A stretch of DNA of 64,000 bases from Auanema rhodensis (Eukaryota; Animalia; Nematoda): contig OZ059897.1 in NCBI GenBank assembly GCA_964057225.1, positions 14,446,001 through 14,510,000 of the forward strand. The letters are read 5' to 3'. The position numbers and the translations under genes are program-made. Of this stretch, positions 33,287 to 38,695 are shown piece by piece; the first letter of the stretch is position 1, and the number at the start of each line of letters is the position of its first letter. The notes below the pieces were generated by a model. That model was not told where the DNA came from, searched no databases, and was given only the letters and a program-made list of their open reading frames with translations.

Positions 33287-34548
33287 TTAAAGCATTTGAT
33301 CCGTTGATCTTTTGGAGATTTTCTCACAAGAATCGTTATCCGGGCAAACCAATAGCGGAGTTGCAGCAAATGCTCCTAATGAACTACCTAAACAGCAGAA
33401 AGTAATTTAAAAACTTCAGTTTTTATTGGCTATACTCAAGCTTTCTCCTTTTCCTGGTCGTTTTGGACCAAGTGATCCCAGAAGAGTAGCAGTTGTAGAT
33501 CGTCCAACAATCGGCTTGATTTCATGAGGTTGCAAAACACGGCGACGTTTTTTTGGCAGTTTTGATCTAATCAATAAAATAATTATAAAAATAAACTTGT
33601 ATATCAATTTACCGAGCTTGAGCATGTGAATAAAACATGGCAAAATTAGAGACAATAACTGGTACCGGTAATGCAATAGTTAATACTCCCATAAGTGCAC
33701 AAACGGAACCAACCATTCTACCCAAATATGTTTTTGGAACCTTTCAAATATAATAATTAGTATAATAAACAATAATATAACTTACAAGATCTCCAAAACC
33801 AATTGTACAAATTGTAATTACAGCCCACCATAATCCAACAGGTATTGAATCAAATTGGTTATCAGGATTATCTTCTACTCTTTCCGCATAAAATACTAAG
33901 GCAGCAAAAATCACAATACCAAGTAGCACAAAGAAAACCAGAAGAAAAAGTTCCTTTAATAAATATGTTTTTATTTAATTTTAAAAAAAATAAAAAACCT
34001 GTGCTGATGCTTTGAAAGTTTGAATTAAAATTTTTAACCCAGTCGAATGTTGAGTAAGCTTGAATAGTCTCAAAATACGGATAATAGAAAAGAATTCCAC
34101 TGAATCTCTATAATAATTATTCATATTATGTGAAATTATTATAATTTATTATATACCTATTTGCCCCTGTTAAGGCTGAATCTAATGCCCAATCTATATA
34201 AAAGGATACTGTAGCTATCATATCAATTATATTAACGGGAGTTCGCAGAAATATGCCAACTCCAGGGCAGAAAAACATTCGAACTATAAATTCTCCAGTA
34301 AACCATACATTTGATATTAATTCCAAATAGAAAAATGCTGGAGCTGGTCTACAAATAATATTTTATAATAGATTATATACATATGAGAAGAGATATCTAA
34401 ACCTGTTAGCTGTTTTACCAACAAAAACTGATTGAGTTGTATTCAGTTTCATCAATTCAATATTAGGAATTCGCCAATCAGGATGTGTTTTGAGACAGAA
34501 ACATATGATAGATATGATGACAAAAAATATATTGATGACGGATATAAT
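33287..34548 (-). CDS. shw-3: Shaw/Kv3 K+ channel, distal S1-S6 + C-terminal cassette B (exons 34548-34403, 34348-34157, 34107-33999, 33953-33786, 33740-33613, 33566-33436, 33387-33287)
   Basis: Spliced in frame (975 nt): S1 [24 protein letters not shown]4 [18 protein letters not shown], pore [19 protein letters not shown]6 [11 protein letters not shown], tail [14 protein letters not shown]...TDQML*. It has no T1 domain of its own. The last intron is less certain (unspliced read-through stops at 33416). The symbol is tentative (shw-3/kht-1 type). Confidence 0.88.
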
Positions 34549-35663
34549 CTAAAATATAAAAATATATTATTATAATTAATATAATTAATATATAATATTC
34601 ATTATATATTATATTGTAATAAGTTTACAAATAAAGTTTTATATGCTTACACATACATACAAAATACAATAATTGTCTTTACACTCTCCTCTACATAATT
34701 ACATTTTTATTTTATTTTATATCAAATTGTTTTCTTTTACTGTTTTCTTATACATATATTCATATATGCATGTGAATAAGGTTAAATAACAATCAATAAT
34801 ATCATTCATGATTCAAACATTCAAACATATATACAAGCATACAAGCATTCCAGCATTATCCATTCTATGCAGGTTATTAAAGTTCTAAGGTTAAAGCAAA
34901 ATTTCAAACAAGCAAATTTACCTTCTGAATCAGTTACACAGAAGTATATCATGTATCTATAGATTATTCTGAATAATTAATATAGAAATTATAAAAAAAA
35001 AGATTTGTAGAAAAATAAAAGTTTTTTTTTTAAAACTTAAAACTTAATACCTCTATATAGGTATTATATGTTTTACATACTCACCCATAATTATCATATA
35101 TATAGTATATATACTATCATATTATTACTTATTAGTTAGATTTCTATTTCTACTAAATATTATCTATTTATTTATAAATATTATATGTAAAAAAATGAAG
35201 ATAAAACAAAGCTATACATATAATGATAATGAAAACAATGACGGAAAAATGGAGATCATCACAGAAAACTTGCAACTGCCGGATAATTTGGAAATTCTTT
35301 GATTTACAACTTTTATTGAAAAGATTGAATAAATGTTTTTAAAAATTATGCATGATTGCATGACTTTGATTAGAAGTTTAGAAAAAAATTCTTATTAAGA
35401 AAATCAGTAAACGTTTTGTTGGAATTCAAATACCGGTAATGATGAAAAGAGAATAATTGACCACATAACATAATTTTTGTGATAAAATGATTAATATAAT
35501 CATTTTTTCACAAAATGTTTAAAACAAATTATATAATATATAATCTATAATCTATATAGTTTTTGTGGTCATATTAATATTTATATTTATATACATAAAT
35601 ATAATTATATATGTAGTTTGTTAGAGAAAAAGCTTTGAAAGAAATATTAAAATTGATATAAGC

Positions 35664-37152
35664 TTATTCTAAAAGTTTCTTAGCATGCTCAGGTGGTTGA
35701 CCATTATGATTTTTTGAATTACAGTTGTGAGTACTATTCATTTGAGGCAAGTTTGTTGAAGAAGATTTTTTGCGATGTTTTGGAAGAACTGGTTTTACAC
35801 CCAACATTGATGGTTTCACTTCATGAGCCTAAAACAAGTGAATTTTAATATTTTCATTATTTCTAAAAATAATTCTGAAAAAAAAAATTTTCTGAAATAT
35901 GAATAACCTGAAGAACACGTCTTCGTTTCTTTGGTAATTTGGCACGAGCTTGTGAATGTGAATAAAGATTTGAAAAGTTTGAGACAATAACTGGTACAGG
36001 TAAAGCGATTGTTAGTACACCCATGAGAGCGCATAATGAGCCGACAACCATACCCAGATAAGTTTTTGGAACCTTAAGAATTAAATTAAATATTTTAAAA
36101 GAAAAAAATATATACCATATCTCCAAAACCTACAGTGGAAATTGTAATTAAACTCCTAAAATAAATAATAAAATTATTTATAATATTCGTATAATTTAAA
36201 AAATATTAAAATATATATTTAAACTTAATAACATACCACCATAGACCAGCAGGTATGCTTGTGAACTGATTCTCAGGATTTGGCTGACTTCTTTCAGCAT
36301 AATAAACCAAAGCGGCAAAAATGACAATTGCTAAGAGAACAAAGAAAACCAATAAGGCGAGTTCTTGAGCGGATGCCTAAAAGTAAAAAAATCCAGTAAA
36401 TTGAATAAATAAAACAATTAAAAATGATTACATAACTATATGTAAGCTTAATTAAATTATCATTATTATTTAAAAATTACCTTAAATGTCTGAATTAAAA
36501 TCTTCAAACCCGAGAAATGTTGAGTGAGCTTGAACAAACGAAGAACACAAATCATGGATAAGAAGTCAATCGTAACTAAAGATCCTATAATATGTAAATC
36601 GTTCGTTAAAAGAAAAGCTAATTCTATGATAATTCGTTTGTGAAAAATCAAAGAAATAGATATATTTCATAAAACACTAACCTGTTTGAACAAGAATAGC
36701 ATGAAGAAGCCATTCAAAATAAAATGCTAAAGTAGATATGACGTCAATAATAGTAATAGGTGATCGCAAAAACCGATGAATTGATGGACAAAATATAAAA
36801 CGAATTAACTATAAATAATAATATAAACTATTAAGAAATAATATAATCATTAAACATACTAATTCAAGTGTAAACCAAGCATTACATATTAAATCTACAT
36901 AGAAGAAATATGGATGTGGTCCTGTGTATGGCTTATGTGTTCCAATAGCTTTTGCAAAAGTACTGTAACCTTCGCCATGCATCACTCGAAAACCGTATTC
37001 GACTGAAACAAATGGTTTATTTTATAAGATTGAAGTTTAAAAACAAAATGATTCATACCTTGAATTTGTGGAATTTGAAAGGACGGATGTGTTTTGAGCA
37101 TAAATGAAATGGTAGAAGCGAGAATAAAAAAAACAGAACAGCAGCTAATAAT
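35664..37152 (-). CDS. shw-3: Shaw/Kv3 K+ channel, proximal S1-S6 + C-terminal cassette A (exons 37152-37059, 37002-36860, 36808-36682, 36584-36481, 36376-36237, 36155-36116, 36072-35908, 35828-35664)
   Basis: Spliced in frame (978 nt): S1 [24 protein letters not shown]4 [18 protein letters not shown], pore [19 protein letters not shown]6 [11 protein letters not shown], tail [14 protein letters not shown]...KKLLE*. Resembles the C. elegans shw-3/kht-1-type Shaw from memory. Confidence 0.9.
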
Positions 37153-37858
37153 CTGAAACAAGTTGGCTCTCAGCTATCTATTCTCTATGCTTAGAAGTTG
37201 TTAGAAGTCTCACTAGCTAGAGATAATACAGCGAATTTTGAACATTTCAAAGTGCAAAATGTATGAGAAAAAACAGATTAGAAAGCATTAGATCAAGCTG
37301 ATTAAAACATGTTAGCGATATGTAAAAAATGAAAAAGCACACCGATGATTACTTTTTCAATACTTTCACACAGTTTTAGCAGGACAAAGTGAAAACAGTA
37401 AAATCAAGCAAATAGGTAAAGGCCTTGATAGCGATAGAAAGCATAAATACTCAGAAAAATCTACAACGTCATCATCATCAGCATTACAGCATTGTGTACA
37501 CATGCAATCCTGTTACGGAAGCATTATTTTAGGGGAAAAAAGGTTTACTTTCAACTGTTTTTATCAGTATTAGGTACTGAGAAACAGTAAAAATACCAAG
37601 AAGACAGATAGAATTAGCTGTTTTATGTCAAAAATCATTCATACATACAAAGTAACTTTCTGAAATGTCCCTTATCCTTTTTATTTTTTTTATTTCGTCA
37701 ATCCACGTTTCAACAAAAAAAATTCATTCAGATGTTTTCAGAGAAATTCAAAATAAAACTTCAAAATATACTTATTATATTGAATAAATCACTCTACTTC
37801 ATCACTTTCTCTTGTTGTTTGAAAGAAAAAAAAATCATAAAAATTATATGGAACATAC

Positions 37859-38695
37859 CCGAGCATATTGTGAACTCCATGGCTCATCAAACAGTGCCCA
37901 TATCCTTGGTTTTATTTGTTGCCATTTAGATAAAGTTCCTGAGTAGTAATCATCTTCCCATCCAAACTTTTTCGCAATCTAATTAGAAAAGTAGAAACAT
38001 AAAAATACAATCAAAATGATTAAAGTCAGACTTCTTCTTGTGTTGGAGGATCACCATCTAAGTCCAATGATTCAATAACTGCTAACGTATCTTGCGTATC
38101 CCTAAACGAGATTTTCTTTTTCTTTCTTTTTTTTTTCATTTATACAAAACGAAATGAAAAGAAAAACTGATTTTTCATTTTGTATATGTAGATATTGTTT
38201 GAAAGAAAAACAAAAATCTAATGAAAAAATGTTTTTTGCTTACAAAATCTTCTTATGTTACAATGACAAATGTTACAAACCTATGCTGGGTGTAGGTCAT
38301 CCAGCAGCATGGCTCAACTTGGTTAGCATCCAAACCCCAAAATTCTAATTCTTCTTCGAACAATGGTCCACAAACATTTGTGGGATAATGAAGTTTACCT
38401 ACACAATGCGTAAAAGATCAAAGATTTATTTTAAATGTATCTTACCAGTTCGATAATAGTTTAAAATCATTGAAAAGACTCCCGGATGTCTATCAAAGAA
38501 ATATTCATTTAATACTGGATCATAATTAGCCAAATTTGGAGTTAGCCTGTAAAATAAAACTTTAAAATAAATTCTGAAACCTATCCAAGACCTTGATAAA
38601 CGAGTAGCTGGAATTTTCTTTAGAACATGTGTGTAGGTTTCGTGTCGTATTCCTCCAACATTCAGAATTACCCGATGTTCCGTGTCCATCCAGGA
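37859..38695 (-). CDS. shw-3: Shaw/Kv3 K+ channel shared T1 (BTB) tetramerisation domain exons (38695-38592, 38546-38446, 38398-38281, 38101-38032, 37978-37859)
   Basis: [21 protein letters not shown]...[11 protein letters not shown]...[32 protein letters not shown] (the HX5C...CC Zn motif)...[16 protein letters not shown], ending at a phase-0 GTATGT donor. Confidence 0.93.

What the first reader, a model, noticed from the sequence alone, without database searches (positions are those of the whole stretch)
33287..38695. One T1 domain, two whole channels: Shaw locus with mutually exclusive S1-S6+tail cassettes
Seen: one set of T1 exons ends at a phase-0 donor (37859). Two tandem cassettes follow (A 37152-35664, B 34548-33287). 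Each begins in phase 0 at the same protein position (IIS...), each is fully open (326 and 325 codons), and each has its own stop. I see no T1 or start exon between them (34549-35663), and an AATAAA (minus strand) lies at ~35312-35317 after A. Established: T1 dictates Kv subfamily co-assembly, and Kv splicing usually swaps short termini or single exons. Inference: alternative 3'-end/acceptor choice swaps the entire voltage sensor, pore and tail while keeping the same assembly domain. That yields two channels, and possibly heterotetramers, from one promoter set. I cannot tell whether this is already annotated for the C. elegans orthologue.
Basis: partly seen in the sequence, partly recalled or inferred. 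Interest (0 to 1): 0.9.

Follow-up and report, generated by a model that had tools for sequence, protein, structure and literature searches.

The report
One Shaw gene, two channel cores
This is a nematode's copy of the shw-1 (Shaw/Kv3) potassium-channel gene, where one assembly-domain exon set is followed by two complete, anciently duplicated membrane cores that are used alternatively; the layout is real and conserved, but C. elegans and Haemonchus annotations already show it.

Summary
On the minus strand there is one set of five T1 exons (38695-37859, phase-0 donor). Two tandem S1-S6+tail cassettes follow: A (37152-35664, 8 exons, 325 aa) and B (34548-33287, 7 exons, 324 aa). They are 56-61% identical and each has its own stop. 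No second T1 exists anywhere in the 64 kb.

- C. elegans chromosome II has the same T1-A-B order. It carries two records with one start: 589 aa (T1+A) and 619 aa, which equals exactly N-terminus+T1 (265) plus B (354).
- Haemonchus contortus gene V3C99_011301 lists both T1+A and T1+B isoform series.

A tree places the A/B duplication at the base of Chromadoria. Both cassettes are under strong purifying selection. In this window an in-frame TAG sits directly upstream of B1, so B cannot encode S1 without an upstream coding exon.

The finding is real but ordinary in novelty: an orthologue of an annotated locus, built like unc-49 and avr-14. I found no paper describing or testing it. Many public nematode annotations model it wrongly, either fused or with a T1-less B. 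The scan also read this same stretch once more (s1-378960, S4 charges).

The parts
51663..51754 (-). 5' coding exon N1 (MDYLSIHDDD...ARKR). It is preceded by an acceptor, so further 5' exons or an SL site lie upstream.
   Evidence: tblastn with the N-termini of the H. contortus and C. elegans isoforms; sequence read.
51486..51537 (-). 5' coding exon N2 (SSVRMFYDESTFADRKT). It ends in phase 0 and joins the T1a acceptor at 38695.
37859..38695 (-). The five T1 (BTB_2 tetramerisation) exons: 38695-38592, 38546-38446, 38398-38281, 38101-38032, 37978-37859. They encode 169 aa that are 100% identical to H. contortus T1. The HX5CX20CC zinc motif is present, and the phase-0 donor lies at 37859|GTATGT.
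35664..37152 (-). Cassette A: S1-S6, pore (TVGFGDM) and tail in 8 exons, 325 aa plus TAA. It is the charge-poor S4 type (R1->C) and is 93% identical to Necator A.
35312..35317 (-). AATAAA about 350 nt after the A stop; the likely poly(A) signal of T1+A mRNAs.
   Evidence: motif only; no 3'-end reads
34549..35663 (-). A-B spacer (A 3'UTR plus the remainder of the long T1e->B1 intron). It holds no T1-like sequence and no convincing coding exon.
33287..34548 (-). Cassette B: S1-S6, pore (TIGFGDL) and tail in 7 exons, 324 aa plus TAA. An alternative read-through stop lies at 33416. S4 keeps R1. It is 84% identical to strongylid B, and its acceptor TTTTAG makes an in-frame TAG directly before the first codon.

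Best explanation
The window carries the orthologue of C. elegans shw-1, a Shaw/Kv3-type voltage-gated K+ channel gene of at least 18.5 kb on the minus strand (51754->33287).

Alternative 5' exons feed into one T1 (tetramerisation) exon set. Its last donor (37859, phase 0) is joined to one of two acceptors.
- The proximal acceptor is that of cassette A (37152). The mRNA then ends at the A stop and poly(A) signal.
- The distal acceptor is that of cassette B (34548). All of A, with its poly(A) site, is then removed as part of a 3.3-kb intron.

The choice is therefore a coupled competition between acceptor use and cleavage/polyadenylation, that is, alternative terminal cassettes. It yields two subunits with the same N-terminus and T1 but different voltage sensor, pore, S6 and tail.

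Shown here:
- the anatomy of the locus;
- a single T1 in the window;
- conservation of the T1-A-B order in C. elegans and C. briggsae DNA, and as fused or adjacent models in clade III, IV and V species;
- annotated T1+A and T1+B products in C. elegans and H. contortus;
- ancient origin of the duplication and purifying selection on both cassettes.

Inferred: that the same splicing occurs in this organism; that the choice is cell-specific; and that the A form (one S4 arginine fewer, S2 E->D) gates differently and can co-assemble with B through the shared T1.
For: - Anatomy and phases.
- Only one T1 in 64 kb.
- C. briggsae L001: T1 19938-21252, A 21550-23975, B 24587-26862.
- C. elegans L002: T1 20868-21746, A 22012-23458, B 24027-25589. 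Two records share start 10001, one of 589 aa ending 23458 and one of 619 aa ending 25589, both with BTB_2+Ion_trans. 265 aa (N-terminus+T1) plus my GT-AG-checked B reconstruction of 354 aa gives 619.
- H. contortus V3C99_011301: T1+B isoforms XGW08868-73 and T1+A isoforms XGW08874-77. The 545-aa T1+B range runs more than 10 kb beyond the 610-aa T1+A range.
- Fused T1+A+B mispredictions without an intervening T1 in Cercopithifilaria, Litomosoides, Steinernema, Ancylostoma and C. briggsae.
- 'T1-less B' models have unrelated N-termini that are translated acceptor tracts (...FPPIFQ...SFQ...FPFFQ). Conservation starts exactly at the B1 acceptor.
- Tree: the A clade (SH-aLRT 96, with Plectus) and the B clade (88) each span clades III-V. 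Their sister is the single-core Trichinella/Trichuris Shaw.
- dN against a trichostrongylid transcript is 0.008 (T1), 0.14 (A) and 0.15 (B), with dS saturated.
- RNA contig L003 shows fully spliced B exons continuous with the A 3'UTR, so transcription reads past the A poly(A) signal.
- RNA(?) runs X1-X4 hold 0.41-0.49 of the sampled words of 33200-38900, about the exon share if T1, A and B are all expressed (weak).
Against: - The 37859->34548 junction and both poly(A) sites are therefore unobserved here.
- The annotated isoforms in other species may partly rest on prediction. I could not see the transcript evidence behind them.
- The one RNA contig that reaches B (L003) does not show T1e|B1. 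It shows the A 3'UTR, then a 39-nt in-frame exon, then B1.
- Several current annotations, including long-read-curated C. briggsae, still list B as a separate T1-less gene.
- The poly(A) signals after B are only variant hexamers.
Confidence: 0.85

Rival explanations
1. B is an independent downstream gene that makes a T1-less channel subunit from its own promoter or an SL trans-splice site. Many genome annotations model it this way.
For: Separate T1-less models exist: Necator RB195_020473, Loa LOAG_01085, Brugia BMA-SHW-1, C. briggsae L5515_013436 and others. L003 shows an extra small exon in front of B1 that lies just after the A poly(A) signal.
Against: In the window the codon before B1 is TAG, and the first in-frame ATG follows S1. 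The N-termini of the T1-less models are not conserved and are translated polypyrimidine/acceptor sequence. The L003 upstream exon has no ATG and is open in frame with B. C. elegans and H. contortus carry T1+B products.
Confidence: 0.07
2. B exons are transcribed only as the 3' part of read-through T1+A transcripts (A stop, UTR, then B exons). This would be non-productive RNA, with B drifting towards a pseudogene.
For: Contig L003 has exactly this arrangement.
Against: B is intact over 7 exons here. It is conserved at 80-84% amino-acid identity with saturated synonymous sites (dN 0.15). A B clade is retained from Plectus to filariae and Caenorhabditis. A single assembled contig may join pre-mRNA and mRNA reads.
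Confidence: 0.04
3. The layout is an assembly artefact: a second T1 (or a gene boundary) between A and B was dropped or collapsed.
For: None found.
Against: The same T1-A-B order with a short A-B spacer (about 0.6 kb) is present in the finished C. elegans chromosome II and in C. briggsae. It is also implied by fused or adjacent models in more than 10 independent assemblies.
Confidence: 0.01

Closest known systems
C. elegans shw-1 locus (chromosome II, BX284602.5 about 8.30-8.33 Mb) and H. contortus V3C99_011301
   Same: This is the orthologous gene. It has the same T1-A-B order, the same phase-0 junction after ...YAR, and multiple alternative N-terminal exons. Both T1+A and T1+B products are annotated. 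The window's A is 93% identical to Necator A and its B 84% identical to strongylid B; T1 is 100% identical to H. contortus.
   Different: It comes from a different, very AT-rich species (27% GC, GC3 about 0.25), with introns of about 45-210 bp inside the T1 and cassette exon sets and a 1.1-kb A-B spacer. I assign the name shw-1 by elimination (shw-3 is on V, egl-36 on X) and from the names CBR-SHW-1 and BMA-SHW-1. I did not see it in WormBase itself.
C. elegans / H. contortus unc-49 GABA-receptor locus
   Same: A common N-terminal part is spliced to one of several tandem C-terminal cassettes that carry the membrane domains. The products co-assemble (UNC-49B/C), and the layout is conserved in nematodes (PMC8841521).
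   Different: unc-49 is a pentameric ligand-gated channel with three cassettes, and its shared part is the ligand-binding domain. Here the channel is a tetrameric Kv, there are two cassettes, and the shared part is the assembly (T1) domain. Co-assembly is untested here.
avr-14 (gbr-2) glutamate-gated chloride channel
   Same: Alternative splicing gives two subunits with identical N-terminal domains but different channel domains (Laughton et al. 1997, as cited in PMC8841521).
   Different: It belongs to a different channel superfamily.
Alternative splicing in other Kv genes (Drosophila and lobster Shaker; mammalian Kv3.1-3.4 C-termini), recalled from my own knowledge and not tested here
   Same: One Kv gene yields several subunits that share T1 and can co-assemble.
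   Different: Those cases swap N- or C-termini, or single exons (S6/pore), not the whole S1-S6 core. In my searches, double cores were seen only in nematode proteins.

Membership tests
Shaw / Kv3 voltage-gated K+ channel | N-terminal T1 (BTB_2) domain with the zinc motif HX5CX20CC of non-Shaker Kv channels | tested here: met
   The spliced T1 translation reads ...[32 protein letters not shown]: H, then 5 residues, C, 20 residues, CC. The T1 sequence is identical to that of H. contortus proteins that carry precomputed PF02214.
Shaw / Kv3 voltage-gated K+ channel | Six-TM core with a charged S4 and a K+ selectivity filter (TxGYG) | tested here: met
   Both cassettes align end to end with Shaw cores carrying PF00520+PF07885. 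The filter is T(V/I)GFG rather than GYG in the whole shw-1 lineage. S4 is reduced: R4->Q in all nematode Shaws, plus R1->C in A. That GFG is compatible with K+ selectivity, as in EAG/ERG, is my own knowledge.
Shaw / Kv3 voltage-gated K+ channel | Groups with Shaw proteins rather than Shaker, Shab or Shal | tested here: met
   All best hits are named Shaw, with 64-69% identity to arthropod and mollusc Shaw over more than 90% of the length. The tree roots the nematode clades on bilaterian Shaw. Other Kv subfamilies were not included in the tree.
shw-1 orthologue | Same locus structure (alternative 5' exons, one T1, A, then B) and reciprocal placement of A and B in the A and B clades | tested here: met
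unc-49-type locus (common N-terminus plus tandem alternative C-terminal cassettes) | A single shared N-terminal exon set, with no second copy between cassettes | tested here: met
   window; Caenorhabditis
unc-49-type locus (common N-terminus plus tandem alternative C-terminal cassettes) | Tandem paralogous cassettes that start at the same protein position and phase, each with its own stop and 3' end | tested here: met
   The poly(A) signal after A is canonical; those after B are variant hexamers only.
unc-49-type locus (common N-terminus plus tandem alternative C-terminal cassettes) | mRNAs joining the common part to each cassette | tested here: inconclusive
In orthologues both products are annotated. 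The only RNA contig I could read shows T1+A, and B spliced downstream of the A 3'UTR.
unc-49-type locus (common N-terminus plus tandem alternative C-terminal cassettes) | Products co-assemble into heteromeric channels | not testable with these tools
   Inference only, from the identical T1.

The most novel reading that the evidence does not exclude
The two shw-1 cores have been kept as alternative partners of one T1 since the base of Chromadoria, because the cells that express the gene tune excitability by the A:B ratio. A has an S4 lacking R1 and an S2 with E->D. In this reading it would be a weakly voltage-dependent or modulatory subunit that co-assembles with B through the identical T1. One gene would then produce a graded series of heterotetramers. 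This would be a Kv counterpart of UNC-49B/C, and in the open literature I searched it has not been described or tested.
Probability: 0.3. Interest if true: 0.55.

Novelty: already known. Interest (0 to 1): 0.35.

Why it matters
T1 decides which Kv subunits assemble. A gene that keeps one T1 but swaps the whole voltage sensor, pore and tail gives two channel types that are guaranteed to be compatible. They are also driven by the same set of promoters and N-termini.

The arrangement has been kept since before Plectus and Rhabditida split, so both forms must matter.

In practice, the main value of this check is for annotation. Many public nematode gene sets model this locus wrongly. Some fuse it into a 'double channel' of 650-780 aa. 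Others split off B as a T1-less gene, including the Brugia entry named BMA-SHW-1. This affects orthology tables and ion-channel target lists for parasitic nematodes.

Functionally the locus is almost unstudied. My paper searches found only passing mentions of shw-1 (a SNP table for D. immitis) and nothing on its structure or function.

Tried and rejected
**Reads.**
All later searches used proteins, other loci or other coordinates.

**Look-ups.**
- The look-up of encoding contigs had no record for P0006 and P0002.
- It returned no DNA for H. contortus because the gene spans 123 kb.

**Literature.**
- I searched for shw-1, shw-3, egl-36, two clone names recalled from memory, and Shaw + T1 + alternative splicing.
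- No description of the two-core layout turned up.
- My recalled clone name C32C4.1 for shw-1 was wrong. That clone is near lsy-6 on V, and it led nowhere.

**Hidden exons between A and B.**
- I looked for a T1 remnant and for phase-0/0 exons, including a homologue of the 39-nt exon seen in L003.
- Only two chance-level candidates appeared, and none resembled that exon.

**Distribution.**
- I asked whether double cores occur outside nematodes, because a Papilio hit scored high.
- The cassette HMM found one full-length core per protein outside nematodes. Two unnamed metagenome or run fragments and a nematode fragment split into two partial matches.

**Organism.**
- I did not identify the species.
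- It is a clade-V-like rhabditid, nearest to Strongylida by protein identity.
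Full report
**1. What is in the sequence**

The window is very AT-rich, 23-35% GC in 2-kb steps. Reading the minus strand from 39000 to 33100 and splicing at GT-AG sites gives three blocks.

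- **T1.** Five exons (38695/38689-38592, 38546-38446, 38398-38281, 38101-38032, 37978-37859) encode 169 aa from MDTEHR to SSQYAR. They carry the HX5CX20CC zinc motif, and the donor GTATGT follows a complete codon.
- **Cassette A.** Eight exons (37152-35664) encode 325 aa from IISCCSVFF... through S1-S6 and the pore TVGFGDM to a tail ending ...AKKLLE and a TAA stop.
- **Cassette B.** Seven exons (34548-33287) encode 324 aa from IISVINIFF... through the pore TIGFGDL. The tail contains [12 protein letters not shown], a motif conserved in the H. contortus and C. elegans B tails. If the last intron is kept, B ends instead at TGA 33416.

A and B are 56% identical by blastp (E=2e-114) and 61% over aligned codons. 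tblastn of T1 against the whole window finds only the one T1 and nothing in the 1115-bp A-B spacer. AATAAA lies at 35317-35312.

'Fully open' is true only after splicing.

The T1 set is not the gene's start. Exon T1a opens with an acceptor and the codons SW. Two conserved 5' exons lie 12.8 kb upstream: 51754-51663 (MDYLSIHDDD...) and 51537-51486.

**2. What it is**

A search with T1+B returns nematode and other bilaterian proteins named Shaw, carrying PF02214+PF00520+PF07885. Three kinds of nematode model appear for this one locus.

- T1 plus one core. H. contortus P0020 is T1+A, and P0006 is T1+B.
- 'Double channels' of 650-780 aa that read T1+A+B straight through. These occur in Cercopithifilaria, Litomosoides, Steinernema hermaphroditum, Ancylostoma caninum and CBR-SHW-1.
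- T1-less B proteins annotated as the neighbour gene of T1+A. Examples are Necator RB195_020473/474, Loa LOAG_01085/086, C. briggsae L5515_013436/435 and Brugia BMA-SHW-1.

The N-termini of the T1-less models are unrelated to each other and end in ...FPPIFQ...SFQ or ...FPFFQ. These are translated polypyrimidine tract plus CAG. Conservation begins exactly at the B1 acceptor.

**3. The orthologous loci**

C. briggsae DNA (L001) has T1 at 19938-21252, A at 21550-23975 and B at 24587-26862, with a single T1.

C. elegans chromosome II (L002) has 5' exons at 10001-12361, T1 at 20868-21746, A at 22012-23458 and B at 24027-25589.

The collection holds two records there with the same start:
- 589 aa ending at 23458, which is P0315 (T1+A);
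- 619 aa ending at 25589, with BTB_2+Ion_trans+Ion_trans_2.

The N-terminus plus T1 of P0315 is 265 aa. My reconstruction of B, with every junction GT-AG, is 354 aa. The sum is 619. So the reference C. elegans annotation already contains the product in which T1 is joined to B and A is skipped.

C. elegans also lists seven T1+A products that differ only in alternative N-termini.

In H. contortus the single locus tag V3C99_011301 carries T1+B proteins XGW08868-73 and T1+A proteins XGW08874-77, with the same sets of N-termini. The T1+B range extends more than 10 kb beyond the T1+A range.

shw-3 is on chromosome V and egl-36 on X. With the names CBR-SHW-1 and BMA-SHW-1, the chromosome II locus is therefore shw-1.

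**4. Age and selection**

I cut every core out of 64 sequences with an HMM and built a tree.

- The A cores form a clade (SH-aLRT 96). It contains Plectus, Pristionchus, Mesorhabditis, Caenorhabditis, Strongylida, filariae, Steinernema, panagrolaimids and Ditylenchus.
- The B cores form a clade (88) with clade III, IV and V members.
- Plectus B, the single Strongyloides/Rhabditophanes core and the aphelenchid cores sit unresolved beside them.
- The sister of all of these is a single-core Shaw of Trichinella/Trichuris.

The duplication therefore dates to the base of Chromadoria.

I compared the window with a trichostrongylid transcript (L003). Synonymous sites are saturated, and dN is 0.008 for T1, 0.14 for A and 0.15 for B. 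Both cores are kept by selection.

Conserved differences:
- All nematode Shaws have lost S4 R4 (KLTQH).
- The rhabditid A clade has also lost R1 (IIRIL -> ICVL). It has D for E in S2 and T for N in S3. Plectus A keeps R1 and the S2 glutamate.
- B keeps the ancestral residues.
- The whole shw-1 lineage has GFG in the filter.

This agrees with the scan's other note on this stretch (s1-378960).

**5. RNA evidence**

The four runs that hold the stretch are tagged RNA only by guess. They hold 0.41-0.49 of the sampled words, roughly the exon share if T1, A and B are all present. This is weak.

The decisive junction count is therefore missing for this genome.

One assembled RNA contig from a trichostrongylid run (L003, SRR20115897) could be read. 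In order, it holds:
- the full T1+A coding sequence;
- the A stop;
- about 600 nt of 3'UTR, with AATAAA;
- an acceptor-like TTTTCAG;
- a 39-nt open exon (TAAVIARRKRKSV) in frame with B;
- all B exons, spliced.

It shows that transcription passes the A poly(A) signal and that B exons are spliced in RNA. It does not show T1e|B1. I found no counterpart of the 39-nt exon in the window or in any annotated protein.

**6. How it most likely works**

The donor at 37859 pairs either with the A1 acceptor (TTGTTTCAG) or with the B1 acceptor (TATTTTAG).
- With A1, the message ends at the A poly(A) site.
- With B1, the 3.3 kb that holds A and its poly(A) site is removed.

Use of B therefore needs both skipping of A1 and read-through of the A poly(A) site.

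In the window the codon before B1 is TAG, and the first in-frame ATG lies behind S1. B can therefore encode its conserved S1 only after such an in-frame splice. I hold this mechanism at 0.85. The rivals are listed with their tests: an independent T1-less gene, non-productive read-through, and misassembly.

Cell-specific choice, different gating of A and B, and A/B heterotetramers through the common T1 are inferences.

**7. Comparison and novelty**

The layout is the Kv counterpart of unc-49, where a common N-terminus is spliced to one of three tandem C-terminal cassettes and the products co-assemble. It also resembles avr-14, which has identical ligand-binding domains and different channel domains (PMC8841521).

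Among the proteins fetched here, double cores occur only in nematodes.

Because C. elegans and H. contortus annotations already contain both products, I rate the finding as already known. It is nonetheless under-described. Seven literature searches found no paper on the two-core structure or on shw-1 function.

Its practical value is as an annotation correction for the many nematode gene sets that fuse or split the locus.

Noticed in passing
L003:1677-2320 (Logan RNA contig of SRR20115897, a trichostrongylid): About 40 nt after the A poly(A) signal there is an acceptor-like TTTTCAG and a 39-nt exon (TAAVIARRKRKSV). The exon is open in phase 0/0 and spliced to B1. It could be an optional T1-S1 linker exon of the B form, or part of a read-through RNA. 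It is absent from all annotated proteins fetched and has no counterpart in the window.
   Followed up: partly
window 36116-36155 and 33786-33953 (pore exons); alignment: The selectivity filter is GFG, not GYG, in both cores and in the whole shw-1 lineage, including its Trichinella/Trichuris sister. Most sampled members of the other nematode Shaw paralogue clades, and the other phyla, keep GYG.
   Followed up: partly
window 36481-36584 (A S4) and 33999-34107 (B S4): All nematode Shaw S4 segments have Q at the R4 position. The rhabditid A clade also replaces R1 by C (Y in one filaria), changes the S2 glutamate to aspartate and changes the S3 asparagine to threonine. Plectus A keeps R1 and the S2 glutamate.
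   Followed up: yes
window 37859-38689: The 169-aa T1 is 100% identical in protein to H. contortus and to the trichostrongylid transcript. Nucleotide identity is only 79%, and GC3 differs greatly (0.28 versus 0.63). This is an extreme constraint on the shared domain.
   Followed up: yes
public annotations (P0001-P0005, P0008, P0014, P0213, P0123, P0128-P0130): Many nematode gene sets mis-model this locus. Some give a fused T1+A+B 'double channel'. Others give a T1+A gene plus a T1-less B gene whose start codon sits in the intron just upstream of the acceptor.
   Followed up: yes
window 33416-33436 / 33287-33387: B has two possible tails: read-through of the last donor to TGA 33416 (...[10 protein letters not shown]), or a splice to the last exon (...[12 protein letters not shown]...). 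H. contortus lists two B tails as well (...DGIGSSTASAI versus ...[14 protein letters not shown]...).
   Followed up: partly
L002:10001-21000 (C. elegans) and window 38696-51800: C. elegans lists at least six alternative N-terminal exons, each ending before the SW codons of the first T1 exon. The 12.8-kb intron of the window probably hides similar short first exons. I located only the two conserved ones.
   Followed up: partly
P0314 (C. brenneri, 1345 aa): One predicted protein contains three cores. It is probably a fusion across duplicated haplotypes in a heterozygous assembly.
   Followed up: no
It is AT-rich intron sequence between exons A5 and A6 and plays no part in the argument. I kept it out of all later searches.
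   Followed up: no
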